Shown: positions 18,986 through 58,531 of the stretch, piece by piece
How positions within the stretch are numbered: the stretch's first letter is position 1
Layout: each line of letters starts with the position of its first letter
IMG/VR virus record: IMGVR_UViG_3300031576_000001
Location: 186,001-250,000 of that record
Length of the DNA: 64,000 bases
Strand: one strand, 5' to 3'
The notes under the pieces: generated by a model
Told to the model about the DNA's origin: nothing
Databases searched by the model: none
What the model saw: only the letters and a program-made list of their open reading frames with translations
Program-made: the position numbers and the translations under genes

Positions 18986-20089
18986 ATGACCTACCCGAAC
19001 CTGGACGATAGATTTCAGCCGATCTACACCAAGCCCCTCACGGGGATTCCCACGGCAAAGCGTGCGCGAGCGGACGCTTCTAGCGCGGGGCTAGCGGGTC
19101 CAGCGCTAGACAGGGTGGTGAGGTTGGAGGGTGCAGAGAGGCACTGGGCGAGAACGACCGCTACCCTGGAAATGGCATTGTGGGCTGCTTTCTCGGTACG
19201 CCACCGGGACTGGCAAGAGGACACGGAGCACCGCAAGGGGTTTGCACGAGACGCGGCGAGCCTGGTCAGCGGGGGAGCCTCTGAGTTGCACTTCCTCACG
19301 GACGTGCTGGCGCTAGCCTGGGCGCACCTCACGTTGGACATCAACTACCACGGCGGCGGGAACGAGGACCAACCCGCCGTGCGCCTGCCCCCGTTCCGCT
19401 CTCTTGGGCTGGGCAAGTGGAACAAGATCGACACGGAGAGCTACGCCAGTGCCGGCAAGTCAGCCCTGGTCATCCTGGGCGAAGAGCTTGACGCTGAAGC
19501 CGAGAGGTACGCCCAAGAGGCGAGCGGGGCGACCGTTACTCAGTTTCAAGCCAGGGACGGTGAGTTGTACGTAGAGGTACGGGTAGGCTCCGTGCTTGCC
19601 GTGTCCACGCACGTTCCCCTGGCGTGGTACAGGGGGAGCGACCTCTGGGGGATTGACCCCTGGGTTGACCGTCTTTGCCTCGCCAAGCTGTCAGCCTGTC
19701 TCAAGTCTGGTTTCAAAGAGGGGATGTTGCCCTGGGCTACGTTGTACAACCGGCTGCAAGCCAGGCGCCGTGTCTTCCGGGCTGCACATTTCTGGTATGA
19801 CTTGCTGCAAAAGTTCCCCGAGTACATGGAGCCCGCCCGTACTGCTGAGCCTGGTTCGCCCCTTCACGCGGTGTGGCAGCTAGCGTGTTTGCCTTACGAG
19901 AGTGACCTCCTGGCGGCGGACCTGTGGCTCAAGAGTGTAGCCGAGGAGGGCGCTTCCATGTCACAAGCGCTAGCCTGGCTAGAGTCCCTCCACCACCTAG
20001 AGGGGGCTCTTGTCCCCCCGGACAGGGTAACCGACCATGACCTCAGTTTCCTCTCCAGCGCGTCTCCCTGCGAGGGTAGCCCAGCGTTA
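18986..20089 (+). CDS. Hypothetical protein
   Basis: GGTGTA-N10-ATG; first in-frame TTA at 20087-20089 (standard end 20146). Confidence 0.6.
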
Positions 20090-20798
20090 CGCTGCAAAGA
20101 CGAAAGCCAAAGCGCCGCCGTCAGCCCCGGAGCCCACGGGGATTGAGAAGGCAATCAAGGACGCCTTTGCTTCTCTGGGGGGCGAGTTGGGCTCTACGCT
20201 GGCTAGTGAGTTCGTCTCTGTTCTTGACAGCAAGCTAGAGAGCGCCCGTGAGCGTGTGCTCAACTTGTCTGCGAAGTCCTGGGCGGTGGCACGCAAGGGG
20301 ACAGAGACCTCCTCTTGGGAATCTGACGAGACAGGATACCACTACTCGGTCGAGCTAGACTACCCAGAGGTTGTAACGGCTACCGTGAAGGCGCCGTTGT
20401 CGTGGGACACACTAGTCACTGAGGTTGCCCAAGGGGTAGACACAAAGCACCGTGGTCTCGCCGTAGAAGTTATGCGTACCCCGGCAGTAAAAGCAGCTTG
20501 CCTCAAGGTGGCGGAAGAGCGGGTGGCGCTACAGACCATTGAAGCAGGAGAGCTACGGACCTCACCTCTGGGTGCGTCCGCGGTAGAGTTCGCTGAGGAC
20601 AAGTCACAAAGGTCCATCGACTCCGACGACGACCCCAACTACGAGATACCCTGGGGTAAGCACGAGATTACGGTACACGGGGGCAGCGTGACCGCAAAGC
20701 TAACCTCCTCTGGCGCGCTGGACGTACTCTTTACCGCGAGCGTCGGGCTAGAGGTTGAGTTTTTCTGGCCCGGTGACCGTGGGTACAACGATTGGTTA
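20037..20798 (+). CDS. RVAxRY-leader protein (putative virion internal protein)
   Basis: N-terminal LPARVAQRYAAK; ends at TTA 20796-20798. Confidence 0.6.
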
Positions 20799-20843
20799 CT
20801 TAGAGGCTCCCTGGCTTCTATCCCTCACAAACAGGGAGAAGCC

Positions 20844-21998
20844 ATGCCCAAAGACGTTGACCGCTACCACGACGAAGTATTGAAAAGCAACCCTGACTAC
20901 TCAGAGGCTCAAGCATGGGCTACGGCGTGGTCAATTTTCTGCCGGAATAAAGACCCTGGGTCGGAGCACTGCAAGAAGCCCACGTCGGAGTACCTCTCAG
21001 GCAAAAATGCGGGGCTACTGGTCAGGGTCGCCTCTGCCTACCTCGACAAGCACGCAGCGCAAGACCCTGAGTATACCTCGCACCTCAAGCACTTCCTGGT
21101 AGCCCTGGACAAGGAGGTCAACAAGCTGGCGGGTCACCGAAGCGAGCCTTTGACGGTGACGACCAAGGACTTTGGTGGTGCGAGGGGTCTGCCGCGCGTC
21201 ATTGTCCAGGGACCGAAGGCACAGCACTACCTCTTCGTGGTCGAGAAAGGTAACCCCAAGAAAGCCTACGGGTGGCAAATTTCGCTGTGCGACGCAGAGA
21301 GCGGCGCCCCTCTGAAGGGTAAGAAGCCTGTGGGTACGCTGAACCCTCGCCCTGAGAAGCGCTGGGCAAAAGACCCCATTGGGTGGCACGACGCCTTTGC
21401 TAGCCTGCGGTCACTTGACCTTGACGCACTCTACGGCAAAGAGGACTTGACCGAGGAGGAGCTAGCCCCTGGGTCTACACGGTGGGACGCCCTTGAGGAG
21501 CTACCTCCCATGGAGACTGAGATTCCTGGGGACGACGCTAGCTGGTCTGACCTGGAACAAGTCAAGAATGCAGCAAAAGCTAAACCGTCTAGCAAGTGGA
21601 AAGACCTTGGCAGCTACAGTCGCGAGGCCACAGCGGTTGAAGAGGCTATTGCTAGTCTGGACGCGGTAGAGAAGGAAGTGAGCCAGGGTATCGAAGAGGC
21701 TACCTCCAAGCTCAGACCTACGTGGGTTGGGGACGCAAAGAAAGTGGTGGGTGAGGTTTACAACAAGCTCCAAGCTGCCTTGAGGAGTGCGGACTTGACG
21801 TTGGGGGCTATGGGTCCAGCACTCCGAAAGTTGCCCCTACACTCCAAGCTAACCCAAGAGGCTGTCGCCATGGTGTCTACTCTGGAGAGCGCGGTTACGC
21901 GGCTCACCGCAGTGCGAGCGGCTTTGAGTCGTGCCACGGTTGGGGACACCCCGGCGGTAGAAGCTGCTTTGGCAAAGACAAAAGCACTTCTAGGTTAG
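20844..21998 (+). CDS. Putative virion protein with ChaB-like N-terminal motif
   Basis: Has its own GGGAGAAGCC-ATG start; SEAQAWATAWS, LLVRVASAY, KNA/KHA sites. Confidence 0.55.
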   Translation: MPKDVDRYHDEVLKSNPDYSEAQAWATAWSIFCRNKDPGSEHCKKPTSEYLSGKNAGLLVRVASAYLDKHAAQDPEYTSHLKHFLVALDKEVNKLAGHRSEPLTVTTKDFGGARGLPRVIVQGPKAQHYLFVVEKGNPKKAYGWQISLCDAESGAPLKGKKPVGTLNPRPEKRWAKDPIGWHDAFASLRSLDLDALYGKEDLTEEELAPGSTRWDALEELPPMETEIPGDDASWSDLEQVKNAAKAKPSSKWKDLGSYSREATAVEEAIASLDAVEKEVSQGIEEATSKLRPTWVGDAKKVVGEVYNKLQAALRSADLTLGAMGPALRKLPLHSKLTQEAVAMVSTLESAVTRLTAVRAALSRATVGDTPAVEAALAKTKALLG

Positions 21999-22006
21999 AA
22001 CACGCC

Positions 22007-23440
22007 ATGCTTTCCGAGAGAGTCGCGACCCGTTACCGTTGTGCGCAGCTAGCCAAGACGGCGGGCAGTGACCTTTGGGCGTCCGTGGTAGCCGCCCTGA
22101 CCCAAGCGGCTAGCGAGGCTAGTGCTTTGAAGGGCGCCGAGCCTGACACTGAGGAGGGTAAGCGTACTCTGCTCAACATGGTTCTACTGGGGACCGGGAA
22201 GCCCCTAGCCTCCTTGGCGGAAAACCCTACCTTCGTAAAGTGGGTCACGCTAGGTTTCCCTTCGGGTCAGGGTGCGGCTACGCTTGAGCAACTCACCGCC
22301 CTTTACGAGAACGCTAGGGAGGAAGCCAAAGCGGTACGCAATGGCGACCCAGTGTTTGAGTTCCGGCAAGCCGTGACCGCCTTTGAGCGCGTGGTCAATG
22401 ACCTCTTGGCAGAGCTAGCGCCTGAGCGTTTGACCTACCAAGGCTTTACGGTCACCAACTATGACCACATGAGCGATGCCGTGGTCCGTGGGCTCCTAGA
22501 GGGTGTGGATTACGTGGTAGCCCTGTTCAAGCGCAGAGGGCTAGAGAAGCTGTTGCACTCTGGGGTAACCGAGATTCACCTGGATATTGAGAACTACATT
22601 AGCGACAAACCTAGCACTCTAGGGCACTACCGTCCTTCTCAGAGGGCGATCCATATGTACCCTAATGGGCTCAGAATAGCCAACACCCCCAGAATGCTGA
22701 GCAAGTGGGTCAACGAGATATTCCTGCATGAGTTTGGGCATTACATTCACCTGGCGTACCTGCCCAAAGAAGCCATGGAGGCGTGGAACGCTACGTGGGA
22801 CGATTTCAAGGTCAAGTGTGAGGTTTTTACACAGGCGACCACAAACATTAGCGTGGAGGAACGTGCGCTATTCTGGTCATTGTTGCAGAAGAATGGCTAT
22901 CAACCGTCCAAGGTAGCACCCAAACTGAAGCCTTTCCTCAGATTGAAATTTGGTGCGTGGCTACGCCAGTACTACTCTGGTCCCCTCATTACAGCGGGGC
23001 AGTTCAAGCTGACCGAGAAGGGTAAGAACTTCTTTGCCCTCTTTGTGGACCCTGAGAAGTACATGCTGGAAGAGCGCGGTTACTATGTGGACGAGCCAGG
23101 GTACGCCAAGGAGTATCAGAAGCTAGAGCGTACCAGACTGACGGACATAGGACTCGTTAGCCCTTCGACCTTCCCGATCCCCAACGAAACGGTAGAAGAG
23201 ATCAAGAAGGCCAACCCTGAGCTAAAGGCTGAGGTTTCAGCGGAGCTAGACAAGTTGCAACCCGTATCGACCTACGGGCGCACCGACGAGATGGAGGACT
23301 TTGCAGAAGCCTTCGTGGCTTTCGTAGGGGCGCCTGAGAAGCTAACCCACATGGCGAAGTTCCGTATGCAGCGGGCGCTCTCTCTTGCTGGGCTGTACGG
23401 CAAAGAGGTCATGAAGCTAGCCCAGCACCCTGAGCAGTGA
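22007..23440 (+). CDS. Zincin-like metallopeptidase (HExxH) with RVAxRY leader
   Basis: MLSERVATRY; FLHEFGH; VSTYGRTDEMEDFAEAF. Confidence 0.75.
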   Translation: MLSERVATRYRCAQLAKTAGSDLWASVVAALTQAASEASALKGAEPDTEEGKRTLLNMVLLGTGKPLASLAENPTFVKWVTLGFPSGQGAATLEQLTALYENAREEAKAVRNGDPVFEFRQAVTAFERVVNDLLAELAPERLTYQGFTVTNYDHMSDAVVRGLLEGVDYVVALFKRRGLEKLLHSGVTEIHLDIENYISDKPSTLGHYRPSQRAIHMYPNGLRIANTPRMLSKWVNEIFLHEFGHYIHLAYLPKEAMEAWNATWDDFKVKCEVFTQATTNISVEERALFWSLLQKNGYQPSKVAPKLKPFLRLKFGAWLRQYYSGPLITAGQFKLTEKGKNFFALFVDPEKYMLEERGYYVDEPGYAKEYQKLERTRLTDIGLVSPSTFPIPNETVEEIKKANPELKAEVSAELDKLQPVSTYGRTDEMEDFAEAFVAFVGAPEKLTHMAKFRMQRALSLAGLYGKEVMKLAQHPEQ

Positions 23441-25126
23441 GGGATTCTCATCAGGCGCGAGGCTGGACAGCACGGACCTGAAACTCTCTAGCTGGTCTCT
23501 GTTGAGGCTCTCCTCCATGACGTAACGCTCAAAGACTTCTGCAAAGGCTTCCTCGATTGAGCCTGCCCCGTAATCAGACACGGCACTGACGGGCTTGATC
23601 TCACCTTGCGTGTCGGATACCTTGTCAAGATACTGGGTAACGAGAAGGTAAGCGTCCCAATGGTCCTTGCTCCAATCCAGGTACCACCTCGTTACACTCA
23701 AAGAGGCGAGTTCCTCCTTGCTGTAGAGCGCTATACCCTCCAGTGTGGCGAGGGTGCTGTAGATTGCGGTCTCAGCCTCCGAGAAGTCTACCCCGGGTAC
23801 GGTGGGTAGTATAGCTCTCAGGCTTCTCTCAAAGGCGTCCCTCAGTCCGTCTAGCTGCGAAACCAATGCTTTCAACAAGTCATCGCCCTCTTGGAAGAGC
23901 AGCTTGTAAATCTGAGTCTGAAAACTGTCAAATGCCTGTTGGGCTTCTTTCTTGACCTTACCTATATTGACAAGGGGAGCCTCTGGGTTGTACCTAACGC
24001 GGTATGGTCCAGAGGGGTACTCCCTGGTTTTCTCAGAGGTATTGGTGCGTACTAGGTCATTGAACCGAGCGCGTTGGTCTGACCGCATAAACTTGTACCA
24101 ATAACGGTGCCCCATTTCGTGAACAATGGTGTCCACCACCGATTGTCGAGGGGGTATGGTGAGCTTTACCGTGTCATCACCATCGTGGTACGTGCCTGCT
24201 GTACTCTCCAAAGAAGTGTAACCGTATTGCTGGTACGCCTCTTGAGCCGCGGGGCTCAGCTTGTCGTAGGACGTGCTACCTAGAAAGAACACCCCATACC
24301 ACAACTTGCCAAAACCCTTACGCTCCAAGAGAGACTTGGCTTCCATGAAGTATTGTGCGTAGGCTTCAGCGTTCGCTATCAGCTCAACCCCATAGCCCTC
24401 TTTGACGATGACTCTCAGTTTGCCAATGCTGAAGTCACGGTACCAGAGTAGGTCACCCTCCTCTTTGGCCTTCTCCGTATATTTAGCTGCCAGGATCTTG
24501 TAAATAAAATCAATCCTGGCGGGCACGTCCACCACGCGAGGGTGCTTCACCTTGACCCAGAGGCGCGGTATGGCGTTCTCGACCATGGCACGAGCCTTGG
24601 CGTTCAGGTTGTACAACCAAGGCTCGTCCTCCTTGACAAGCGCGTCCTTGTCCTCTTGGGGCATTCTGTTGGCTAGCCGGCTGGCCGTCGCCAGCAAAGC
24701 CGGTATGTCTACGTCAGGGTAGCTCTTTAGTTGAGCCGGTACGTTTCGACCGTAGACCTTCCAAGAGGCGTCTTCGATCAGGCGCCGGAACAGGCTGGCT
24801 AGCTTGGCGCTGGGCGAGTTATCGCCCTTGTACGGGATGGTCGCTAGCTTGGCGTCAAAGGCTAGCTGTCGTTTGTTAGCCTCCTCTAGGTCGTCGCGTA
24901 TGTCCTTGACGTACTCCTTGACAGCTTGCGCGGCTACCGGGTGGAGCCCCATCGCCTTTAGCTCGCGCTCAAAGGTCTCTAGCCAGTAGTAAAGGTCATG
25001 GATGTAGCTGAACGTATTCTTGTTCTTCAAGCCCTCGACAAGCTCTTTCTTCTTGGCTTGGAAGAACTTGATCGGCACAAAGCCGGCGTGTTTGGCGCGA
25101 TACCTGGCGACAAGACGGTCAATCAT
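23417..25126 (-). CDS. Zincin-like metallopeptidase (HExxH) with RLVARY leader
   Basis: MIDRLVARYRAKHA; IVHEMGH; VSDYGAGSIEEAFAEVF. Confidence 0.75.
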   Translation of the reverse strand: MIDRLVARYRAKHAGFVPIKFFQAKKKELVEGLKNKNTFSYIHDLYYWLETFERELKAMGLHPVAAQAVKEYVKDIRDDLEEANKRQLAFDAKLATIPYKGDNSPSAKLASLFRRLIEDASWKVYGRNVPAQLKSYPDVDIPALLATASRLANRMPQEDKDALVKEDEPWLYNLNAKARAMVENAIPRLWVKVKHPRVVDVPARIDFIYKILAAKYTEKAKEEGDLLWYRDFSIGKLRVIVKEGYGVELIANAEAYAQYFMEAKSLLERKGFGKLWYGVFFLGSTSYDKLSPAAQEAYQQYGYTSLESTAGTYHDGDDTVKLTIPPRQSVVDTIVHEMGHRYWYKFMRSDQRARFNDLVRTNTSEKTREYPSGPYRVRYNPEAPLVNIGKVKKEAQQAFDSFQTQIYKLLFQEGDDLLKALVSQLDGLRDAFERSLRAILPTVPGVDFSEAETAIYSTLATLEGIALYSKEELASLSVTRWYLDWSKDHWDAYLLVTQYLDKVSDTQGEIKPVSAVSDYGAGSIEEAFAEVFERYVMEESLNRDQLESFRSVLSSLAPDENPSLLRVLG

Positions 25127-25188: not shown

Positions 25189-26355
25189 ATGACCGTCAAG
25201 CAAGCCGCCTCTATGGGTGACCCCGCGGTACTTCTATCGCAACTTTCCAGTCTTAGCTTCGACCTGGACCGCAACGTGGCGGATCTCAAGGAGTACCACG
25301 CCAAGCTAGAGCGCCGCGACCCAGACCGTTACCGTAACAGTTCTATCGTAGATGCTGCTTGGAAGCAATTCGGAGACATTCTCGGGTCACGTAAGGTGCG
25401 CGACCTTGGTTTTGCGCTCCTACAGGATTACGATATGACGGTAGCCCACCGAAAGGCTGTCGAGGTGGGGGTACACTTGCTCAGTCACGGCGCCCGTCCC
25501 AAGGCGCCAAGGACGGGTGACCGCGCGTTGGCAATGGCTAGCTTCGTCTTGGACCGGTGCATCACGGTGCAGAACCTTCTCAGCTCCGCAAAGGTGGTCA
25601 TTGAGTCAGGCAAGAAGCACAGCACAGAGGGTGTGGGTGCTACAGCCAACGCAACGAAGTTTCCCGCAGGCAGCTTCACAGTAGTCAACTCTGGCGGGTT
25701 CCCTGAGAAGACCATCAGAACGGTCGTGGACCTTGTAAAGAAGGCGGACCAGGCTCTAAAGCGCAGTGGATTCCCGCAGGTTTGCTATGGCCCCGTGTTC
25801 ATCACGAAGACAGTGGGTCGCTCGTCCAGTGTGCTGGCGTTCTACGATCTGAAGACGGATGATATGTACGTCCGCGCTAACCTGAAAGGCTCGGGCAACA
25901 GCATCCTCCTGAACTTCTTGCATGAGGTAGGGCACCGCTTTGACTTCAAGTTTCTAAAGGATAACCAGGGTAAGCAACGCCTCTACAATGAGGTTTCCAG
26001 GCAAGAGGGTCAACGTGAATTTATCGCACCCATCGTGGGTACACAGTTCAAAGACCACAAAGGTCTGAACTGGGAGGTTCTACGTGTAAGCGGCTCTTCC
26101 CTCTATGTGCAAGACGCAGAGGGGCGCACGGGGACAATGAGTGTGCGTGGGTACTATGAGCAGACCGGCAAACTAAGGGACACGGCTAACCCTAAGCACC
26201 TTGGGTTTGTGTCTGCTTATGCCAAGACTGACCCCGATGAGAACTTCGCTGAAATGTTCTCTCTGTACTGTGATGATACGCTCCCCGTCATGCAAAGCCT
26301 CTCCTTTGAGGAAGTGTGCTTTGGTAAGCAGGACACGTCACGCAAGACCGCGTTA
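25189..26355 (+). CDS. Zincin-like metallopeptidase (HExxH)
   Basis: FLHEVGH; VSAYAKTDPDENFAEMF. TTA at 26353-26355 (standard end 26367). Confidence 0.75.
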
Positions 26356-26364
26356 GCTCAGAGC

Positions 26365-26841
26365 TAAGGCGCCCATTAGCTCGCCCCAGTCCGAGGCTAG
26401 TAGGAAGTCGGCACAGAGGTGTACACCCTCAGTCAGCCTCGGGAGCTTGCGGTAGGCACACCCAAGAGGCGCTGTCCCTGCAAGGCAGGGGGGCTCAGGC
26501 GTGTCCTCCTCGCGCAGCCGCGGACCTTCGTAGCACTGGCTACCCAGGCGAGACCCGTAGGTGTACGCCTCGCTGTAGTACGGGCAGTGGTTAGCGGAGA
26601 CCTCTTCGGGGGTAAACTCGACCGTGATCCGCCAGTGTCCCCTTATAGGCTTCTGACCTGACCAGTTCTTGGGGAGGGGCAACAGGGTGCTCAGGTAGGC
26701 TCGCCCCTGTGCCTGACTGCAACGGTAGTTAGGGCAGTCAAGGTAAGCGTCCGGGTGGCGGTCAAAGAAGCTTGTGTCGCCGTCGCCTGTAAAGTAGCGG
26801 TCAACGAGCACGGTCTCTTTACGGAGGGGGGGTGACGGCAT
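26365..26841 (-). CDS. Cys-rich hypothetical protein
   Basis: GGTGTA-N12-ATG; TTA at 26365-26367 (standard end 26353). Confidence 0.5.
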
Positions 26842-26880
26842 GGGGGCTCATGGTACACCTCTTTTCCTCGCACGTCTACC

Positions 26881-27960
26881 ATGACGAGCACGCTAACCGA
26901 GCGAGTGGTAGCCAGACACCTCTCAGCCTACGTAGAGGTGCCGGACTACGACGAGCCCGAGGAAAACGACTTTGAGGCTGCCAAGAGGGAAGACCTTGCC
27001 TATTGGGACAAGGTGGAGGCGGTCTTCTTCAAGTTCGCCAAGACCTACGTGAAGCCTCTGGTAGCCAACCCCAGCTTTGAGCCGGAGTTTCGCTCTGCGG
27101 TGTCTGACTGCTTCTTCAAGGCGAAGGGCTCTCACACACAGTTCAACATTGCATTGGCTTTGCACACCCGCTCCCCCCGAGGGTGCTATCAGTCGCCCTT
27201 GGAGCACTCGTGGAACTACCGTAACAAAGAGGCCATTGCCTACGCTAATAAGCTGCGCACCGGGAAGAAGCTAGACCGGGCACACCGGCAGATTGAGTCT
27301 GTCGAGGGTTGGTTCCGTAGCCTGGCAGAGTTCAAGGCGTACAGTGAGGGCACCGAGATCATGGAGGCGCTAGAGGCTACGGCTGACGTTTCCGGGTGGT
27401 CTCAAAAGTGCCTGGACGTAGCTAACGCCCTCTCCGACCACGTACACAAACTCAAGTACGCCTCGTCCATGTGGGGTAGCCCTACCATTCTCAAGAACTT
27501 CCAAGAGGCATGGGACGTGGCGCGTCAGGGCTACAAGACGATAAAGCCCATCTTTGAGAAGGCGTGGCTACAGTTTTGTGGGGCTGACCGGCAGCTAGAC
27601 AAGTTCACAGACGCTTGGTGGAAGGTACGCCAGATTACCCTAAAGGCTTACGAGGATTTCCGAGTGGGGGACAAGTCCGCCGTCGTAAAGCTCTACGCTG
27701 TCCGTGTCGAGACGTGCCTCCGTCAGTACCACGAGGTCATGGACCGGGGGCGAGAGGCTTTCGACCGTGACCTCTTCGTCAAGGCGACCAAGTGGAGCGA
27801 CATGCAGTCCGAGTACCAAAACGCTCAGAGGAAATTCTTGATAGACTTGATAGACTGGGATCTGCCATGGCCTTGGACGGAGCACCACCCAAAATCCTGC
27901 ATACTCAAGGCGGTCACTCAGCTTGAAGCCTTGGACCGCAAGCGTGGCACACTGTTCTGA
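26881..27960 (+). CDS. RVVARH-leader hypothetical protein
   Basis: MTSTLTERVVARHLSA; 359-aa helical ORF. Confidence 0.65.
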   Translation: MTSTLTERVVARHLSAYVEVPDYDEPEENDFEAAKREDLAYWDKVEAVFFKFAKTYVKPLVANPSFEPEFRSAVSDCFFKAKGSHTQFNIALALHTRSPRGCYQSPLEHSWNYRNKEAIAYANKLRTGKKLDRAHRQIESVEGWFRSLAEFKAYSEGTEIMEALEATADVSGWSQKCLDVANALSDHVHKLKYASSMWGSPTILKNFQEAWDVARQGYKTIKPIFEKAWLQFCGADRQLDKFTDAWWKVRQITLKAYEDFRVGDKSAVVKLYAVRVETCLRQYHEVMDRGREAFDRDLFVKATKWSDMQSEYQNAQRKFLIDLIDWDLPWPWTEHHPKSCILKAVTQLEALDRKRGTLF

Positions 27961-34888: not shown

Positions 34889-35083
34889 GCTTCGTCCGTA
34901 CGCTACACCAATTAAAGGAGCGATGCTGTGCTGTGCCACCACGCGGCAAGGTAGTAACCAACTGTGAACGCGAAGAGGCACCACCCTGACCAGAGGCGCC
35001 AGCGGGACAGCCTCTTTACCTCGCGGGGCTGAAGGGACCACCCTTGGGTGTCTTGGTCCATGCCGGTGTAGGCAGAACAAGAC

Positions 35084-43307: not shown

Positions 43308-43355
43308 GGTCACTTGCCTCCGTGTCGTGCGTCGTTGTTGAAAAGGCAGCCTGCC

Positions 43356-43763
43356 TAACGTCCAGTAGGGGGGTTTAGCGTTACCCTTACGTGTGCCCGT
43401 GATCTCGACGAATTTCACGGTTTTCTCGACGCGGGCGCCGTTCTTCCGAGAGAACTGAACCACCACCCCCGTGCCGGTGACACGCTGCACCGTGCCGTTG
43501 TACGTGCCGCACCCCCCGGGGCAGGGGTAAGCCCACGACACCACCGCACCGGGGTAGAGGTAGACGCCGCGGGACCAGCAAAACTCGACCCACTGGTCCA
43601 GGGCGTCCTTGTGTGAGCCGTGGGCGGGCATCACGGGGACCGCAAACAAGCCTTCCTTGTCGCGGCTGTCCACGCAGAGACCTTCCACCACGGAGAGGGT
43701 GAATTCCTTATGGGTGCCGCGGTTACCGACGATGACGAGGTTTTTGAGGTTGAGGGGGCGCAT
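43356..43763 (-). CDS. Hypothetical protein
   Basis: Starts at a CGTA-class promoter; ends at in-frame TTA 43356-43358. Confidence 0.6.
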
Positions 43764-44739: not shown

Positions 44740-46524
44740 ATGACGCTATGTGACCGGGTAGCCGCGAAGTACAAAGAGAAGAAGAAGGTCAAGACCCAGA
44801 AGGGCGAGTCTACGGTCTACCTCTACTCGGAACGCCAGGTCAAGAACCGCAACAAGGAAAAGGCCAAGAGGCTAGAGTCTCTTCGCAAGAACATTGGTGA
44901 CCTTATGGGTCGCGTCAAGCGTGACCTAAAGTCTGAGGACGTGGACACCAAGCTAACCGCGCTCGCCGTTGCGCTTGTTGACTCTACGTATGAACGAATT
45001 GGAAATGAGGAATCTGCGGACGAGCGTGGGCACTACGGGGTTACCGGGTGGCTCAAAAGTCACGTCAAGTTCAGCAAGAGCAAGGCGGTTATCAAGTACA
45101 CGGGCAAGGCTGGCGTCGAGCACACCAAGGAAGTAAAAGACAAAGCCATTCTCTCCGCGCTACGTGACGCTTGCGAGGCGGTTGAGAAAGACGACCCGAT
45201 CTTTGAGTACGACGGGGGCACCGTGACCCCTGAGAAGGTCAATGCTTACCTGAAACCGTCCAAGATAACAGCCAAGGACTTGAGGGGCTATCATGCTAAC
45301 GATACGATCAAGGCCATTCTGAGGACTCTACGCGGTAAGGGCGGCAAGCTCCCCAAAGACAAGGAGGAGCGCAAAGCTAAGCTCAAAGAGGAATGGAAAC
45401 AAGCCCTCGCAGAGACGGCTGAGATTATTGGGCATGAGTCCATTACATTGAAAAAAAGCTACCTTGTGCCCGGGCTTGAGGCAGACTTCATGAAAAACGG
45501 CACGGTAAACGATAAGATGGCTTCCCTACAAAGCTCCCGGTACTCTTCTATTGCTCAGCGAGTAAGCCAGCGATGGGCGCACCTTCACGATTGCGTGATC
45601 CACGCGGGCTGCCCTGTGTGTGGCTTCACGGTGGACGAGGCTACCGGAGAGGTATACGACCCTGGCTACCCCTGTCCTGTGTGTGGCGTGGGTGGCGCCG
45701 TTGTGCTTTCCGCTGAGGACTCCCTGGGTCGACAGAAGATAGCCTCTGAGGCGGACTCTGAGGTTACGCTAGCGGCTCGCGTGATGGTAGCGGCTTATCA
45801 AGGCTCCCCGGGGATAGACAAGACTGCCAACATGGCGGGTCGTGTCAAAGACCTACTTGCCCTTTGGAAGCGGGCACCCTCCGTGTGGGAGAAGATCAAA
45901 GAGGCTATTGGTTTGCCCGACGACTTCGACAGCCTCTCGATGCTGGGCAAGGCGCACGCCCTCATGGGAGCCTTCAAGGAGTTTGCGGCGCAGGGGAAGA
46001 AGGCAGTCGCCCACATTTTCCACCAGCTACCGACGACCTTCCCTCTCAGCATGTTCTTCGTGCCGCGTAAGAAGGTGCCAGGCATCACGGACCTTTTGGC
46101 AAGACTGGTTGACGAGGTACCCTGGCTCAAGTCCGCGCTAGGCAAGGCGAGCGCTCACCTGGGGAAGCTGGACGACTTGCTCGACAAGTACGTGCCCATA
46201 ACCAGCAAGGTCATCAAGGCTGCCGCCTTTATCTGGGTCTGGTTTGCGGCAGCCGAGCTATCGTGGGACATACCGTTTCTGGTCAGGGGTTTTACGGGGC
46301 TCATCGGGCTAGGGGAGCTTTTCGGCTCCATGCCAGAGAGCGCCCTGGGTCTGATAGCCAGCATGTTTGGGCTAGGGTACGGCGCCCTCCCGGTTACCTT
46401 GGTTATCCGGCTTGTCTGGCTTGTCGCAGAGGATTACCTCTCTTGGGTACCCGGCAAGGGGCTCAAGGTTCACTGGGACAAGCTAGGCATACAACGCCAC
46501 GATGAGCTAGTGGTGACTGCGTTA
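44740..46524 (+). CDS. DNA topoisomerase IB fused to a Zn ribbon and a hydrophobic C-terminal domain
   Basis: RIGNE, YTGKAGVEH, TAKDLRGYHAN, IGH...KKSYL give the R-K-R-H-Y pentad; CPVC twice; TM-like tail. Ends at TTA 46522-46524. Confidence 0.8.
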
Positions 46525-46525
46525 G

Positions 46526-46753
46526 TCACCCCACCCCGGGCACGTTCTCTTTAGCGAGCGCGATGACGAGACGGAAGAGCGGAGCACCATCCTTGTTATA
46601 GACGGCGCTGTGGTTGTAACCACCGGGCTCCCCGGTGAGTGCCGCAAGAAGCTCGCTCATGATCCGGTACGCCTCTCCCCTGGTCAGAAGGAGGATCTTG
46701 GTGTCGGCGTCCCCGGAGACAGGGGTTTCTGCACTGAGAGTGATCAGTTTCAT
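46526..46753 (-). CDS. Hypothetical protein
   Basis: Preceded by a CGTA-class promoter. Confidence 0.5.
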   Translation of the reverse strand: MKLITLSAETPVSGDADTKILLLTRGEAYRIMSELLAALTGEPGGYNHSAVYNKDGAPLFRLVIALAKENVPGVG

Positions 46754-47393: not shown

Positions 47394-47663
47394 ATGGGTA
47401 TGACGGATTACATCCAGCCTGGGGAAACCGTTCTCTACGGAAAATTCAAGAACCGCCCCGCTCTGGTGGTGCGCTTCTTCCGAGATGACCGTGGGGTACC
47501 CATGGTCGAGCTAGAGCCCGTCCCCAAGGGTCGCAAGTCAAACCGGATTATGTCCCTCTTTACCGTGTGGAAGCTACCCGCCAACCGTGCTGAGGCTACC
47601 GCGACCAAGATTGCAGGGCGCTATGTGGGTAGGTATGAGGTATCACCCGATAGCGACGACTTA
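47394..47663 (+). CDS. Small SH3-like hypothetical protein with KIAGRY motif
   Basis: GETVLYGKFKN; TTA at 47661-47663. Confidence 0.5.
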
Positions 47664-48289
47664 GCTTTCCTGGGTCTGCGGCAAATGTAGGAGCCCCCCG
47701 GTGGCGCCGGGCGCCAACGCAACCAAGAGGCTATCTCCGGGTGCGCGTGTTCTAGCCAGGTCATGGTGCGTTCTTTTCGTTTCCACAACGCCTCTAGGCT
47801 AAGAAATGTGGTGCGACCGATGTCCGCATAGCTCTCCCCTTTACCTAGACGGTAAAGAAGAAGGGCGTCTACGCCCGGAGGTTGGTTGACCACGATAACC
47901 GCTAGCTGAGGGAGTACCTCATCGTAAAACGTATTCTCCCGGGCTAGCTCTTCGCGTTGCTCTTTCTCTAGCTGGCGTTGTTTCTGGTCACGTCTGCCCA
48001 TGACCGCCATTTTGCGGCTGTGGTCAATGGCACGGTTTTTTCCGCAGCACGCGGCGTAGTTGAGGGCTGACCAACCCGTCAAACCCTTGGCTAGAACCAG
48101 GGCGACCACCTTGTCAGCGCCCTCTGCCCACTTGGGAAACAAGACCCTCAAAGCGGGAAAGTCTTGCGACGTGCGAAAACCTCTCTCAAAGCCCTCTCGC
48201 ACCCTTACCTCTAGCTCTGGGGGTAGTTTAGCCTCGCCCTGAGAGGGTTCTGAGGTGGCTACGGGCGGCAGCGTCGAGGGCGTTTCCAT
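47621..48289 (-). CDS. ECF-like RNA polymerase sigma factor
   Basis: Region 2-like KNRAIDHSRK and region 4-like HTH GESYADIGRTTFLSLEALWKRKER. Confidence 0.7.
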   Translation of the reverse strand: METPSTLPPVATSEPSQGEAKLPPELEVRVREGFERGFRTSQDFPALRVLFPKWAEGADKVVALVLAKGLTGWSALNYAACCGKNRAIDHSRKMAVMGRRDQKQRQLEKEQREELARENTFYDEVLPQLAVIVVNQPPGVDALLLYRLGKGESYADIGRTTFLSLEALWKRKERTMTWLEHAHPEIASWLRWRPAPPGGSYICRRPRKAKSSLSGDTSYLPT

Positions 48290-51686: not shown

Positions 51687-52276
51687 CGGGTGGTCTCGTC
51701 GGTCTCGACCGTGTTTTCGAGGTTGGTGCGGAAAGCACGCCCCGCGTTGAACCATTCCAGGGAGTCTCCCCAGTGCGCCTCTGGGTAGAGCTTGGGATCG
51801 TCGTACCCACGGGCAAACGCCCCGATGCACGCCGGCATCGCGGTACCAAGGTCTTCGTAGTACGGCACCTTGAAGGCTTTGCTGATAACCGCCTCGTAGC
51901 CATAAGGGCTCTCCCCCATGACGCTCTTGTAGTCAGGCTGGTTTTGCAAGAGCCAGGCGCCCAACGGGTCTACGCCCTCCCGTGATGTATCCCTGAGAAA
52001 CTTATCGTCGCTGTAGCTGTACAGCACCCCAAAGTGCCCCTGGCTAAGAGGAATGTTCTCCCTCTTAGCCCACGCTACCGCGGCTGTCATGGCGTCGAGA
52101 AACGGAGCCGGGCTGGGTACCCCATCGGTTTTCCACTTGAATGTGTCGAGCTGCGCTTGCTTTTTCTTGGCTTTCTGTCGGTTCTTGAGCAAGTCAAAAA
52201 CGCTCATAATACCGTAACCGTAGGCACACAACGCAGCGATGAAAGCCGCACTTTTCAGGATGTAGGGGGTATCCAT
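51683..52276 (-). CDS. Membrane-anchored hypothetical protein
   Basis: GGTGTA-N11-ATG; N-terminal TM helix. Confidence 0.6.
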   Translation of the reverse strand: MDTPYILKSAAFIAALCAYGYGIMSVFDLLKNRQKAKKKQAQLDTFKWKTDGVPSPAPFLDAMTAAVAWAKRENIPLSQGHFGVLYSYSDDKFLRDTSREGVDPLGAWLLQNQPDYKSVMGESPYGYEAVISKAFKVPYYEDLGTAMPACIGAFARGYDDPKLYPEAHWGDSLEWFNAGRAFRTNLENTVETDETTR

Positions 52277-52326
52277 GAGAGGTAGCGTACACCGCCGCCC
52301 CCTGACCCGCACCCATTAAACGCCAA

Positions 52327-52358
52327 GAGGCTCCCCTGTAGTCACACAAGGGAGCCTC
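52327..52358 (-). terminator. Stem-loop downstream of the vWA gene
   Basis: GAGGCTCCC 52327-52335 pairs with GGGAGCCTC 52350-52358, 24 nt after the TTA. Confidence 0.55.
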
Positions 52359-52382
52359 CCCGGTCGCGGTACCGGCAAGGGG

Positions 52383-55657: not shown

Positions 55658-56011
55658 TCAGGGGAACTGGGCGACGCCCTTGAAGGTGTAGATCGGACCC
55701 TCGACGGCGCCCACCGTCACGGTCGCGGGCTTGCTCAGCTTGCGCAACACGACCCGGTTGAGGGGGTCGCCCGTGTTGAGGCTCACCTTGTCGCCGCTCA
55801 GGCGAGCCGAGGACATCGCCCACATGACGTGGGCGGGGGTGCCGAAGACCTTGAAGGTCACCCGGTAACCCATGCCAGGCTCGAAGGTGGCGCCCTTGAT
55901 GGTGCCTCGCATACCCTTGCGGGTCGAGACGGCTTCGCAGCCCTTTTCCACGATGAAAAGGGTGCCGACGAGGCGCGCGGGGTCAAACTTGGGGGTTTTG
56001 GAGGTGGTCAT
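55658..56011 (-). CDS. Hypothetical protein
   Basis: Starts at a CGTA-class promoter. Confidence 0.6.
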   Translation of the reverse strand: MTTSKTPKFDPARLVGTLFIVEKGCEAVSTRKGMRGTIKGATFEPGMGYRVTFKVFGTPAHVMWAMSSARLSGDKVSLNTGDPLNRVVLRKLSKPATVTVGAVEGPIYTFKGVAQFP

Positions 56012-56045: not shown

Positions 56046-56116
56046 CGGAAAAGATGTCGGGAGGGGACACCTTTTAATAGAAAGGACTCGACGATGGGAG
56101 TCACCCTTTACCCTTG

Positions 56117-57709
56117 TAACCGAGAGGAGGCTAGGTGAACGATGTCCCACGCGGGCTCGCCTGTGTAGACCTCAGCCTCTAGGGGTGTGAAGTGCCCCAG
56201 TAGGAGCCTTGCCTTCTTGCTGGCAGAAACCTCCAAAGACTCGATGGCTGCCATGAGGTTCAGCAAGACCTCTGACGACTCGTTCTTGAGGGGACCGTCA
56301 ACAAGGTGGTTCAGCAAGTCCAGCGCCTTGGGGTTGAGGGAATAATGCGACCGCCCCCCTTTGAGCGCCGTGAGGTTGATCTTTACCCCGAGAGGCTTGC
56401 TGGTGATGGGGGTCAGTCGCCAGTCGTCGCGCAGGGCGACAACGGATTCTGGTTTGAGGGCTACCGCCTTACCGTTGAAAAACATGGTTGCCGTGTACTG
56501 TGTGGGTCTCACGCCCTGAGCCACGTCAAACATGATTTCCACCTGGATCTTGCGACCCGCACCTTCAGCCTCAGCAAGGAAGCCCGCGCCAGCCAGGGCG
56601 TCTTTCAAAGAGAGGGTCTCTTTCTCGGTCCTCACGTCCTTTGCGGTGAGCGTAGTCTTGGTGGGGCTAAGGACGGCAAACTTCTTAGGTACCTCGAAGT
56701 CCCCAGGTAGACTCTTGGCGAGCGCCAGCATGACTTTCGGAATCGCTGAGAGGTTCTTGGCTACCCCGGAGACTGCGAGAAAGGACTCCTCGGCTACGGT
56801 CTTTAGCCCCGTGGCGCTAACACTGGGGGTTTCATTGTATCGCACCCCACAGAGCACGCCGTACTGTTCGCCCTTCTTACCCACCGCTACGAAGATTTGC
56901 GCGGTTTGGTCCACGGTTGAGCCCTCCCTTCTCAGCGTTTTCCAGCCGTGGTCGGCTACCACGCCCCATTCCACCCCGGAGGGGGGGTTGTAGAAGGGCA
57001 CCCCTGGAATGGTGGTGGGTGGCTTCTTACTGTTGCGATAGTGGTTGACGGGTACCGCAAAGAGAGCCACTGTATCCTGCAACGCGTCAACCACACCCTC
57101 TTTGGTTGTAAAAGTGCGGACTACCTGTGGGACTGACGACAATTTACCTGAGCCTTGGAGGGAGTAAGCCCATTTGGACAGATCCCCTCTTGGCTGAAAC
57201 ACTTTGAGGAATAGATTCCCGTCGTAGGTATTACCAGCGATGCGACAGGCTACACCTTCGTTGATCAGTTCGATCTTGAAAAGCGACCACGGCACAAGGT
57301 CTGGCATTTGTGCCGTAAGATAGCGTAGCCAGTGGGGGGAAGCCTCTTGGCATACCCTTAGAAGATCCGTAGCTGGGGGCGGTTGCTGGGGTCGCGGTGC
57401 GGGGCGCGTGTACGGTGACTGTGGACGGGGAGCGTAACCACCCCCACCCCCGCTGTACTCGGGCGTAGCGCGCTGTACCCCCGTTAGTACGTCCTTGGCC
57501 ACGTTGACCTGGACCATCTTGCTTGGGTCACCACCCCGGTCAGGGTGGTTCTCAATCGCCTTGCGCTTGTACGCCTTCTTGATGTCCTCTTCGGTGGGTG
57601 TACCCGTCAAACCTAGCAAAGCCAGCGCTTCGCTACGCTTCATGGCTTGGACCAGGCGAGCATAGAGGGTTCTCTTGTAACGGCGAACAAGTTCGTTTGG
57701 GTCAAGCAT
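56117..57709 (-). CDS. J-domain (DnaJ N-terminal) protein, long
   Basis: IKKAYKRKAIENHPDRGG...VNVAKDVL. TTA three codons before the TAA at 56108. Confidence 0.8.
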
Positions 57710-57814
57710 GGCTTCTCATCACAGAGGGGGATAAAAACTACCTTTTTCCCCGAGAGTCTAAAGTAAGATGCCGCGCTACCTCTTGGCTATCGGCGTGCTA
57801 CACTCCTGCACACC

Positions 57815-58114
57815 ATGAAAGCTCTATTGATCCTGTTGGTTCTGCTCACGGCGTCGAGCACGGCTTACGCTGACATTATGCCAGGGAGGTTCCCCCGCTA
57901 CAACCCGCCACCCCGTTATATACTGTGGCAGGAGCCCCCGGCGTGGGATGACCACTCGCCGGTCCCTAGTGCGCCTCTACCTGGCACGCCTCAACCCTGG
58001 GAAGTACCGGTACCTGCAACGCCCCCTGCCCCTGCGGGGGCGCTGGCGCTGGTCATGCTGGCTCTAGGTGCTACCGCCCTCTTGGTTACCAGGCGCAACG
58101 CAAAAGCAGCCTGA
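57815..58114 (+). CDS. Small secreted Pro-rich protein with C-terminal TM anchor
   Basis: Signal peptide ending AYA-D, Pro-rich body, TM helix followed by RR. Confidence 0.65.
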   Translation: MKALLILLVLLTASSTAYADIMPGRFPRYNPPPRYILWQEPPAWDDHSPVPSAPLPGTPQPWEVPVPATPPAPAGALALVMLALGATALLVTRRNAKAA

Positions 58115-58150
58115 CACAGAGGGTGTCCTTCTATTCCCTACCTGACAGGT

Positions 58151-58531
58151 ATGCACCATCGGGTTGTCGCACAGTACGTTCGCAAGCTCTACGCCCGCCT
58201 CGTCCTGGCAATGACCACCCAGGAAGCCAAGAGGCTCTTGGGGTTGACCTCAGCCTACCCGACCCAAGAGGAGGTAAGCAAAGCCTGGAAACAGAAGGCG
58301 CGTGAGAACCACCCCGACCTGGGGGGTAGTGACGCGGTGATGGCTCAGATCAACGCAGCCAAGGACGTACTTCTCGGGCTAAACCAGCGATTCACCCCGG
58401 ACCCTACGTGGTCTACTGGGGGTCCGCAACAGGCTCAAGCCACGCCAGCGCAGGGGTGGTCATGCAGAACCGCCCTCCAGCACGACCCACAGGGGATAGC
58501 CAGAGAGAACAGTTTCAATACCTCCGGGTTA
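58151..58531 (+). CDS. J-domain protein, short
   Basis: VSKAWKQKARENHPDLGG...INAAKDVL. TTA at 58529-58531; 3' end uncertain. Confidence 0.7.

What the first reader, a model, noticed from the sequence alone, without database searches (positions are those of the whole stretch)
20037..58200. Shared RVAxRY leader and K-x-A sites on unrelated proteins: candidate capsid-targeting and processing signal
The motif R-[VIL]-[AV]-x-[RK]-[YWH] recurs in unrelated proteins: PARVAQRY (20037), VRVASAY (20844 gene), SERVATRY (22007), DRLVARY (25126-), TERVVARH (26881), CDRVAAKY plus internal AQRVSQRW and AARVMVAAY (44740), TKIAGRY (47394), ELVRRY (57709-), HRVVAQY (58151), RRIVARW (1340). It is often near KTA/KHA/KNA/KIA/KQA. 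By analogy with the T4 internal-protein capsid targeting sequence and jumbo-phage prohead protease processing, it may load enzymes (zincins, TopoIB, J-domains) into the head for ejection (inference).
Basis: partly seen in the sequence, partly recalled or inferred. Interest (0 to 1): 0.75.

Follow-up and report, generated by a model that had tools for sequence, protein, structure and literature searches.

The report
Shared terminal peptide tag on phage enzymes
An uncultured soil huge phage and its relatives attach the same ~12-residue peptide (core R-V-A-x-R-Y) to the ends of a dozen unrelated enzymes, most likely as an address label that loads them into the virus head for injection, though this is not yet shown.

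Summary
The motif is real and far beyond chance. The window is part of a 322.6-kb IMG/VR huge-phage contig whose capsid protein resembles that of phage G. A profile built only from tags in other genomes scores at least 12 bits at 8 of about 310 N-termini here, against 4 of 72,605 internal positions (0.4 expected). Five strong N-terminal tags lie in the window, at 20037, 22007, 25126(-), 26881 and 44740.

The tag is modular. Zincin homologues carry it at the N-terminus, the C-terminus, both ends or in tandem. It recurs on 1-8 proteins in nine of ten related huge-phage records, and is absent from Tunturi_5 and phage G.

Cargo includes zincin peptidases, topoisomerase IB, a 2H/Acb1-like phosphoesterase, DRAT-like ADP-ribosyltransferases and J-domain proteins. 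These are the domain types of injected "polyvalent proteins".

In one relative, five such modules are fused into one 1,712-aa ORF between portal and prohead protease, with tag-like peptides at the junctions. Each module maps to a separate gene here that carries a tag or tag-like peptide.

This supports a head-targeting peptide analogous to the T4 capsid targeting sequence, but only indirectly. No receptor, cleavage or virion data exist. The K-x-A "processing site" is not supported.

The parts
20037..21998 (+). 653-aa protein of unknown function. N-terminal tag core RVAQRY at aa 13-18 (nt 20073-20090). Second, internal tag-like VRVASAY at aa 329-335 (nt 21021-21041).
   Evidence: 15.3 bits N-terminal. 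Residues 264-335 are homologous to a G003 protein stretch that ends in LLIRRVASRYKSA. No Pfam or PHROG hit.
22007..23440 (+). 477-aa zincin metallopeptidase (HEFGH at aa 241-245). N-terminal tag MLSERVATRY (nt 22013-22036).
   Evidence: The 27-sequence family alignment has an invariant HExxH. Homologues carry the tag at the N-terminus, the C-terminus, both ends or in tandem. In the AF2 model residues 20-466 are confident, while the tag is a low-confidence helix (aa 2-18, pLDDT ~44).
23417..25126 (-). 569-aa second zincin-like protein (HEMGH at aa 336). N-terminal tag MIDRLVARY (nt 25120-25100).
   Evidence: 14.7 bits. Homologous to a tagged 425-aa protein of G003.
25189..26367 (+). 392-aa zincin paralogue (HEVGH; weak Peptidase_Mx1/Mx match below Pfam's cut-off) with no tag at either end. 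It is context and an internal control.
26881..27960 (+). 359-aa protein of unknown function. N-terminal tag MTSTLTERVVARH (nt 26896-26919), followed by a conserved DYDEP segment.
   Evidence: 19.3 bits; 19.1 bits. G001 has tagged proteins with the same tag-then-DYDEP start.
44740..46554 (+). 604-aa type IB topoisomerase (PF01028, aa 36-236). N-terminal tag MTLCDRVAAKY (nt 44749-44772). Second tag-like AQRVSQRW after the catalytic domain (aa 272-279, nt 45553-45576), followed by a ~330-aa extension.
   Evidence: TopoIB orthologues in G001 and G003 have the N-terminal tag and lie between TerL and portal. The LR745208 orthologue ends in ..ATVASRWQDRFLD.
47394..47690 (+). 98-aa KOW/SH3-like protein with a weak tag-like TKIAGRY near its C-terminus (nt 47604-47624).
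   Evidence: It is homologous to the module that directly precedes the TopoIB tag in the fused G004 ORF.
56108..57709 (-). 533-aa J-domain protein. Its N-terminus MLDPNELVRRYK is a degenerate tag.
   Evidence: does not score. Orthologues in G001 and G003 begin with canonical RVASK[FW] tags.
58151..58660 (+). 169-aa J-domain paralogue. Its N-terminus MHHRVVAQY is a degenerate tag.
1340..1657 (+). Doubtful 105-aa ORF with RRIVARW at aa 15-21. Probably not part of the system.
   Evidence: 6.3 bits, low coding score.

Best explanation
The peptide is a modular address tag. Its consensus is (D-P)-[LI]-x-x-R-V-A-x-R-[YF]-[KL]-x-A, about 12-15 residues. It lies directly after the initiator Met, at the extreme C-terminus, or at module boundaries.

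Proposed mechanism (inferred): the conserved residues sit at i, i+1, i+4, i+5 (R, V, R, Y/F) plus a hydrophobic residue at i-3, which would line one face of a short helix. That face would dock on a component of the assembling prohead, such as the scaffold core, the post-portal protein, the portal or the inner capsid surface. A changeable set of enzymes would thereby be enclosed in the head and delivered to the host with the DNA. The enzymes include zincin peptidases, TopoIB, a 2H/Acb1-like phosphoesterase, ADP-ribosyltransferases and J-domain proteins.

Shown: the tag exists, is under peptide-level selection, is portable between unrelated proteins and between termini, and marks a gene set linked by synteny and gene fusion to the head module.

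Inferred: the helical form, binding to a prohead component, packaging and injection.
For: 1. Enrichment at termini. 8 of ~310 N-termini score >=12 bits against 0.38 expected, using a profile trained only on other genomes.
2. Modularity. Zincin homologues lacking the N-terminal tag carry it at the C-terminus. Some have both, and some have tandem copies. Tandem or double copies fit a binding motif (avidity).
3. Clade-wide use. 1-8 tagged ORFs occur in nine of ten related 100-510-kb records. None occurs in the distant Tunturi_5 or phage G.
4. Cargo types. Zincins, TopoIB, DRAT-like ART and a 2H/Acb1-like phosphoesterase are the domain types of polyvalent and MuF-fused effectors, described as packaged and injected (PMC5512222).
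5. Head-module linkage. In this genome the order is big1177, tagged 129-aa, TerL, portal, post-portal protein (with a tag-like peptide), protease, scaffold-like protein, MCP, then C-tagged and N-tagged small proteins. TopoIB lies between TerL and portal, or between portal and protease, in G001, G003, LR745208 and G004.
6. Gene fusion. The G004 1,712-aa ORF between portal and protease joins 2H, zincin, zincin, KOW, TopoIB and the post-portal protein N-terminus, with tag-like peptides at the junctions. All five mappable modules correspond to separate tag-bearing genes here.
7. The AF2 model leaves the tag as a low-confidence helix outside the confident fold.
8. Precedent. [quoted passage not shown]
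Against: - There are no virion proteomics, no cultured relative with the tag and no receptor.
- The one complex prediction (MCP x2 plus tag) gave no answer.
- The five window genes lie among replication and nucleotide-metabolism genes, not in the head module.
- The scaffold-like protein has its own, different conserved C-terminal motif.
- Linkers between tag and domain are very short (3-6 aa in the zincins), unlike many encapsulation peptides.
- The helical hydrophobic moment of the tags is no higher than that of shuffled sequences.
- Tags at internal junctions fit a processing site equally well.
Confidence: 0.5

Rival explanations
1. The peptide is a recognition or cleavage site for a protease, either the prohead protease or the tagged zincins themselves. 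It would mark the boundaries where multi-module precursors are cut. Stand-alone genes would keep it as the remnant or substrate end of such junctions. This does not exclude targeting, since the T4 CTS does both.
For: - Tag-like peptides lie exactly at module junctions in the G004 1,712-aa ORF, and inside the TopoIB and 20037 proteins.
- Zincin peptidases are proposed processors of polyvalent proteins (PMC5512222).
- In this genome 6 of 12 tags have [LI]-[STA]-E directly before RVA. From my own knowledge, this resembles the phi-x-E cut sites of T4-type prohead proteases.
Against: - A cut site gives no reason to conserve the peptide right after Met, or at the extreme C-terminus, of single-domain proteins across many genomes.
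- It gives no reason to duplicate the peptide in tandem.
- The acidic residue at -1 is not conserved in relatives.
- The protease family could not be assigned.
Confidence: 0.2
2. The peptide is a terminal recognition tag for an ATP-dependent machine or chaperone encoded by the phage or host. Candidates are the Cdc48-like AAA+ ATPase, the J-domain/Hsp70 system and Cpn60. It would act as a degron that times effector activity, or as a handle for unfolding or refolding.
For: - From my own knowledge, AAA+ unfoldases classically read short peptides at either terminus.
- The genome encodes a classic AAA+ ATPase at 290706-292328, Cpn60 and two J-domain proteins.
- In G001 the AAA+ gene lies ~3.4 kb from the tagged zincin.
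Against: - The AAA+ family is very large (6,592 relatives at E<=0.001). It is also present in the tag-free Tunturi_5, so it does not track the tag.
- This reading does not explain the head-module synteny or the fusion to the post-portal protein.
- J-domain proteins are themselves tagged in relatives.
Confidence: 0.1
3. The peptide assembles or localises the enzymes somewhere other than the capsid. Examples are a cytoplasmic multi-enzyme complex, a replication compartment or the membrane. A host secretion signal is another version of this idea.
For: - It is a portable motif on functionally diverse enzymes.
- The genome encodes cytoskeletal (Volactin-like actin) and chaperone genes.
- RVARRFL variants superficially recall the twin-arginine motif.
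Against: - No hydrophobic h-region or AxA site follows the motif. The following sequence is polar or the folded domain begins at once.
- C-terminal and tandem copies do not fit Sec or Tat signals.
- The zincin family is essentially absent from 185,579 bacterial and archaeal genomes: one hit, on a 4-kb MAG contig.
- The synteny and fusion evidence points to the head module.
Confidence: 0.1
4. There is no dedicated function. The similarity would come from chance, composition or shared ancestry of paralogous N-termini.
For: - The two J-domain proteins are paralogues with similar N-termini.
- Two zincins are distant paralogues.
- R, V and A are common in a 59% GC genome.
Against: - Observed 8-10 strong N-terminal copies against 0.38 expected, with an independently trained profile.
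- The carriers share no detectable similarity outside the tag.
- The same peptide switches termini within one family.
- It recurs in nine other genomes.
Confidence: 0.02

Closest known systems
Capsid targeting sequence (CTS) of phage T4 internal proteins (IPI-III, Alt)
   Same: A short conserved leader is the only shared feature of otherwise diverse proteins (PMC3012670). Among the tagged proteins of relatives is an ADP-ribosyltransferase, the same enzyme type as T4 Alt.
   Different: - No sequence similarity.
- This tag also works from the C-terminus, in tandem and at module junctions.
- Neither removal by the prohead protease nor packaging has been shown here.
- The phage lineage has a phage G-like HK97-fold MCP, not a T4-like one.
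Polyvalent proteins and MuF/portal-fused effectors of phages and conjugative elements (Iyer et al. 2017, PMC5512222)
   Same: The domain repertoire matches: zincin-like peptidases, ART, 2H phosphoesterase. [quoted passage not shown] The G004 1,712-aa ORF is such a protein, placed between portal and protease.
   Different: In the window's genome the modules are separate genes scattered over the genome, each carrying the short tag instead of a covalent link. No MuF domain was detected in the post-portal protein. The tag is not mentioned in the passages of that work I searched.
Encapsulin cargo-loading peptides and bacterial-microcompartment encapsulation peptides
   Same: These are short portable peptides at either terminus that load unrelated enzymes into a protein shell. 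For encapsulins the shell has an HK97 fold. This comparison rests on my own knowledge.
   Different: - The consensus sequences differ.
- Here the shell would be a DNA-filled virus head.
- Linkers here are much shorter.
- No shell-binding evidence was obtained.
Shared C-terminal capsid-binding peptides of scaffold-type proteins (herpesvirus scaffold and protease; 80-alpha scaffold and SaPI1 CpmB)
   Same: The same short terminal peptide is shared by different proteins so that they enter the same procapsid. This comparison rests on my own knowledge.
   Different: Those peptides belong to scaffold or size-determination proteins. Here the scaffold-like protein has a different conserved C-terminal motif, LSSLWxSAPDVxxAFG.

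Membership tests
T4-type capsid targeting sequence | Short leader at the extreme N-terminus shared by otherwise unrelated proteins | tested here: met
   The carriers show no similarity outside the tag.
T4-type capsid targeting sequence | Leader ends in a prohead-protease site and is removed on maturation | not testable with these tools
   No proteomic data exist. The proposed K-x-A site is not enriched convincingly. A phi-x-E precedes the core in 6 of 12 local tags but is not conserved in relatives.
T4-type capsid targeting sequence | Directs the protein into the prohead scaffolding core and virion | not testable with these tools
   Only indirect evidence is available: head-module synteny and gene fusion. 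The complex prediction gave no answer.
T4-type capsid targeting sequence | Strictly N-terminal position | tested here: not met
   C-terminal, double, tandem and junction copies occur.
Polyvalent proteins (PMC5512222) | Many effector domains, including a zincin-like peptidase, in one polypeptide encoded next to virion or transfer genes | tested here: not met
   It is met by the relative's G004 ORF. In the window's genome the modules are separate genes.
Twin-arginine (Tat) signal peptide | S/T-R-R-x-F-L-K followed by a hydrophobic h-region and an AxA cleavage site | tested here: not met
   Most copies have a single Arg before Y/F. No hydrophobic stretch follows, and C-terminal copies exist.
Encapsulin cargo-loading peptide | Family-specific consensus (for example the G-S-L type) binding the luminal face of the shell protein | tested here: inconclusive
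   The consensus differs. Binding to the MCP could not be assessed (no answer).
Zincin metallopeptidase (cargo at 22007 and 25126-) | HExxH zinc-binding motif conserved across the family | tested here: met
   H241, E242 and H245 are invariant in 27 sequences. HEMGH is present in the second protein. The fold search gave only non-significant zincin resemblances.
Type IB topoisomerase (cargo at 44740) | Topoisom_I catalytic core | tested here: met
   PF01028 at E=4e-26, 92 bits against a cut-off of 23.7.

The most novel reading that the evidence does not exclude
An abundant clade of uncultured soil huge phages uses one position-independent peptide 'zip code' to load an exchangeable arsenal into the capsid for co-injection. 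The arsenal includes proteases, TopoIB, ADP-ribosyltransferase, an anti-CBASS-like 2H phosphoesterase and J-proteins. The same modules are alternatively delivered as one fused polyprotein. This would be a non-covalent counterpart of polyvalent proteins and a ready handle for packaging foreign proteins.
Probability: 0.45. Interest if true: 0.8.

Novelty: new variant of a known kind. Interest (0 to 1): 0.7.

Why it matters
If the tag is a head-loading signal, one short motif would let us read from sequence alone which proteins a large group of uncultured soil huge phages injects into their hosts. The group is large: the capsid gene has more than 2,000 protein clusters (90% identity) at E<=1e-10. 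That would be a catalogue of early counter-defence and takeover enzymes that is otherwise invisible.

It would also link two known delivery strategies, fused polyvalent proteins and T4-like leader-tagged internal proteins. The same modules appear fused in one genome and tagged in another.

Finally, it would offer a 12-residue portable tag for protein packaging. Even if the function turns out to be different (processing site or degron), a conserved terminal signal on about 4% of the proteome is a defined, testable feature of these phages.

Tried and rejected
- **Complex prediction.** MCP x2 (alignment A6) plus residues 1-35 of the tagged zincin gave no answer: score 0.00, controls not run. It is evidence neither for nor against binding. 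The submission passed once I removed a phage G row taken from the fetch of an annotated region, which I take to be an unpermitted source.
- **Wrong MCP.** I first took 290706-292328 for the MCP, because it matches the Tunturi_5 gene annotated 'major head protein'. Alignment, Pfam and a PDB profile show it is a classic AAA+ ATPase. The true MCP is 82638-83534. The apparent 'zincin next to MCP' synteny in G001 is therefore zincin next to AAA+.
- **Scaffold test.** I asked whether the scaffold-position protein shares the tag at its C-terminus. It does not: 1 of 120 homologues scored >=8 bits, and that one was the query itself. The family has its own motif.
- **Empty annotation searches.** Pfam, PHROGs and PADLOC gave nothing useful for the unknown tagged proteins. 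The atlas gave nothing usable. The PDB profile and fold searches of the zincin had no significant match. The prohead protease family is unassigned.
- **Amphipathic helix.** The hydrophobic moment is not above that of shuffles. Only the i, i+1, i+4, i+5 spacing remains as an argument for a helix.
- **K-x-A site.** 3 of 11 tags against 7% background.
- **Shared promoter.** Tagged genes share no upstream motif. Two upstream motifs exist in the genome but are not tied to tagged genes.
- **Cultured relatives.** Tunturi_5 and phage G have no tag. The phage collection holds no homologue of the tagged zincin.
- **Literature.** I found no paper on this motif.
Full report
**What the window is.** The window is bases 186001-250000 of a single 322,633-bp contig (58.6% GC). 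It is held as an IMG/VR virus record, classed linear, with CheckV completeness 68%.

It is a huge phage. It encodes:
- a large terminase (66835-68844) and a portal (71107-72930);
- a prohead protease interrupted by an intein (77631-80567);
- a Q-rich scaffold-like protein (80570-81883);
- a 298-aa HK97-fold capsid protein (82638-83534). It matches the solved phage G capsid protein gp27 (6WKK) at E=2e-59. It is 82% identical to uncultured phage LR745208, 50% to Tunturiibacter phage Tunturi_5 and 38% to phage G.

The window itself holds replication and nucleotide genes: a helicase with a LAGLIDADG insert, DNA polymerase, ThyX and methyltransferases. It also holds the genes of the finding. Gene calls outside ORF listing come from my own simple codon-usage caller and are approximate.

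**Is the motif there, and is it more than chance?** Yes. The five strongest claims are exactly where stated, and all lie 3-13 residues after the start codon:
- MTSVSSPARLPARVAQRY (20037)
- MLSERVATRY (22007)
- MIDRLVARY (25126-)
- MTSTLTERVVARH (26881)
- MTLCDRVAAKY (44740, the real start of the TopoIB gene)

The strict regex has only 29 six-frame matches in the genome, and seven of them are N-terminal in long ORFs.

To avoid circularity I built two profiles from tags found only in other genomes. One came from the zincin family. The other came from 22 tags on non-zincin proteins. With the second profile, 8 of about 310 N-termini score at least 12 bits. The TopoIB gene and an ORF cut by the contig end add two more. 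Only 4 of 72,605 internal positions reach that score, so about 0.38 N-terminal hits are expected by chance.

Codons within the tags differ freely (AGG/CGA/CGC/CGT for Arg, GTA/GTC/GTG/GTT for Val). The constraint is therefore on the peptide, not on the RNA or DNA.

Further copies lie outside the window:
- N-terminal: 14935, 65904, 93216, 185062 and 322547.
- C-terminal: 89637-90062 (..NASLTERVARRYLSRLPVLRSR*) and 263368-263928 (..LLLAKRVASNYLRRG..).

**The weaker claims.**
- The two J-domain proteins (57709-, 58151) do not score by themselves. Their orthologues in two related genomes begin MVADPKRVASKF and ..LIQRVASKW. The local N-termini therefore look like degenerate tags.
- TKIAGRY (47604) is weak. 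It sits at the end of a KOW-like module that, in a fused relative, is followed directly by the TopoIB tag.
- VRVASAY (21021) and AQRVSQRW (45553) are internal. Both are conserved in orthologues at what look like module boundaries.
- AARVMVAAY does not match the profile, and RRIVARW (1379) is weak and lies in a doubtful ORF.
- K-x-A occurs within 15 residues after 3 of 11 tags, against a 7% background. In relatives the tag simply continues R-Y-K-x-A, so this is the tail of the tag. I found no evidence for a separate processing site.

**The tag is modular and position-independent.** The protein at 22007 belongs to a zincin family: HExxH is invariant in 27 aligned sequences. It has 63 relatives, on contigs of up to 490 kb.
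- Many relatives start with the same peptide (MDPLAHRVARRF, MTDPIALRVAARYK).
- Some begin directly at the first conserved helix and carry the peptide at the extreme C-terminus instead (..VLQRYLYDRN, ..QVVNRYLHARNQ, ..VLERFLTG).
- Some have it at both ends.
- Some have two copies in tandem (MDPLASRVVRRFLTLRDPLTLRVARRFL..KVAARYRVARKVADRYQRS).

An AlphaFold2 model of the local zincin is confident for residues 20-466 (mean pLDDT 86). It leaves the tag as a low-confidence helix (residues 2-18, pLDDT about 44). The tag is therefore not a confidently packed part of the fold.

The conserved positions (hydrophobic at -3, R0, V1, R4, Y/F5) follow an i, i+1, i+4, i+5 spacing. This would place them on one face of a helix. 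A simple hydrophobic-moment test is not significant.

**The tag is a feature of the clade.** A 17-column profile of the tag (A2) finds 9 places in the window's own genome. In related records it finds:
- 6, 6, 8 and 3 places in G001 (435 kb), G002 (497 kb), G003 (513 kb) and LR745208 at E<=0.05;
- 8, 2, 1, 8 and 3 places in five further partial records at E<=0.01;
- none in G004 (which has only degenerate, internal copies), Tunturi_5 or phage G.

In these genomes the tag again follows the start codon directly in most cases. A few copies are C-terminal or tandem. The zincin family is essentially confined to phage contigs: one hit, on a 4-kb MAG contig, among 185,579 prokaryote genomes.

**What carries the tag.**
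- In this genome: two zincin-type peptidases, a type IB topoisomerase, a 2H phosphoesterase and several small or unknown proteins. The 2H protein matches the 2'-5' RNA ligase superfamily and also Pfam's anti-CBASS Acb1 model just above its cut-off.
- In relatives: also DRAT-like ADP-ribosyltransferases, SprT-like peptidases and J-domain proteins.
- The identifiable replication and nucleotide-metabolism enzymes are not among the hits.

Iyer et al. described this domain list for 'polyvalent proteins' and MuF/portal-fused effectors. They argue that these are packaged and injected with the DNA and processed by zincin-like peptidases (PMC5512222).

**Link to the head module.** In the window's genome three tagged small proteins lie inside the head module. 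One of them sits directly upstream of the terminase gene. The large protein between portal and protease has a tag-like peptide after a charged leader: GSSVAQRVLARLLQ here, and TMAERVASAFLV in its G001 orthologue.

In G001 and G003 the order is large protein, tagged 129-aa protein, TerL, tagged TopoIB, portal. In LR745208 and G004 the TopoIB lies between portal and protease.

The most telling case is G004, where one 1,712-aa ORF fills the space between portal and protease. It consists of, in order:
1. a 2H phosphoesterase;
2. a zincin C-terminal part;
3. FRVAQAY;
4. a second zincin (HEITH);
5. LRIAKTF;
6. a KOW-like module;
7. LRVSAKYQKKK and the TopoIB;
8. GRVASAYLY;
9. the N-terminus of the post-portal protein.

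Its five mappable modules hit five separate genes of the window's genome, and every one of these carries the tag or a tag-like peptide: 263368 (C-terminal), 208007, 233394 (window 47394), 230740 and 72970. Three of the five are strict terminal tags. With about 3-4% of genes tagged, that alone is improbable, of the order of 4e-4.

Proteins fused in one genome and separate in another often work together. Here the partner is a head-module protein.

**Most likely mechanism.** I read the peptide as an address tag that docks cargo enzymes onto a component of the assembling prohead, so that they are enclosed and later ejected.

The closest known system is the T4 capsid targeting sequence. [quoted passage not shown] T4 Alt, an ADP-ribosyltransferase packaged into the head and injected (PMC5512222), is a close parallel to the tagged DRAT-like proteins.

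- Shown: the tag, its selection, its portability, its cargo spectrum, and its synteny and fusion link to head genes.
- Inferred: binding, packaging, injection and any cleavage.

I put this reading at about 0.5.

**Rival explanations.**
- *Protease site (about 0.2).* The junction copies fit a protease recognition site equally well. Half of the local tags have [LI]-[STA]-E just before RVA, which resembles T4-type cut sites (my own knowledge). That residue is not conserved in relatives. A cut site also explains neither conservation right after Met or at the extreme C-terminus nor tandem duplication. This reading is not exclusive of targeting.
- *Recognition tag for an AAA+ unfoldase or chaperone (about 0.1).* This is suggested by the either-terminus placement and by the phage's Cdc48-like AAA+, Cpn60 and J-proteins. 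The AAA+ family is huge and also present in the tag-free Tunturi_5.
- *Localisation elsewhere, or secretion (about 0.1).* This lacks support. There is no hydrophobic region or AxA site after the motif.
- *Chance or paralogy (about 0.02).* This is excluded.

**Novelty and limits.** I found no paper describing this motif. It is best filed as a new variant of a known kind: a capsid-targeting or encapsulation peptide, here in the phage G-related soil huge phages, position-independent, and interchangeable with covalent fusion.

The limits are plain:
- the genome is a metagenomic contig, 68% complete;
- no cultured relative has the tag;
- the receptor is unknown;
- the single complex prediction allowed (capsid protein plus tag) returned no answer.

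Noticed in passing
Whole genome, for example upstream of window 42864-43763(-), 55658-56011(-), 37446-38069 and 52194-54665(-): Two conserved upstream elements lie at fixed distances from start codons. AGCGTAAGAGGGGTT starts 13 nt upstream (16 genes). GGTGTA[AC] lies within 100 nt upstream of 44 genes, mostly 16-19 nt from the start. Many other genes have no Shine-Dalgarno sequence, and a 'CC ATG' context is common. This suggests phage-specific promoters with very short leaders.
   Followed up: partly
Genome 290706-292328 (outside the window); Tunturi_5 gp90 (PP885688.1 68759-69988): A classic AAA+ ATPase (Walker A/B, Cdc48/p97-like by PDB profile) has a ~150-aa C-terminal extension. Its Tunturi_5 homologue is annotated 'major head protein', which looks like a mis-annotation. 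The real Tunturi_5 MCP is at 281096-281971.
   Followed up: yes
Window 2893-7050 (+); genome 77631-80567 and 83670-86387: Intein or LAGLIDADG homing-endonuclease insertions occur in the helicase (aa ~759-963), the prohead protease (Hint/intein, aa ~198-679) and a DNA methyltransferase-like protein.
   Followed up: partly
Genome 109429-110430 (outside the window): A 333-aa actin-fold protein matches Pfam Volactin (PF25216) at E=5e-61. This is an unusual cytoskeletal gene for a phage.
   Followed up: no
Genome 34708-36306; window 56108-57709(-) and 58151-58660: The phage encodes its own Cpn60/GroEL-type chaperonin and two J-domain proteins.
   Followed up: partly
Genome 80570-81883 and 120 homologues: The gene after the protease is scaffold-like. 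It has a strongly conserved N-terminal domain (MRERTTWNR..ADPYLMNQDHV), a Q-rich middle, an acidic stretch and a conserved C-terminal motif LSSLWxSAPDVxxAFG. The C-terminal motif is probably the capsid-binding end.
   Followed up: partly
Genome 82638-83534 (MCP), aa 181-190: The capsid protein contains an invariant HDLRVAR[IY] segment that resembles the tag core (9.4 bits). This may be coincidence, or the tag may imitate a capsid segment.
   Followed up: no
Window 52194-54665 (-): An 823-aa protein matches PHROG 2426 (unknown function) at E=1e-152 over its full length. This is a widely conserved phage protein of unknown role.
   Followed up: no
Genome 322490-322633 and 1-300: A tagged ORF (MTPLSVRVTQRYRLA..) runs off the contig end. 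The contig is therefore cut inside a gene, in line with the 68% completeness estimate.
   Followed up: no
L021 (LR745208.1) around 26,000-27,600 of the locus: The TopoIB of LR745208 appears fused to an N-terminal HAD-like phosphatase domain (DFDGTLF motif). It ends with a C-terminal tag-like ATVASRWQDRFLD.
   Followed up: no
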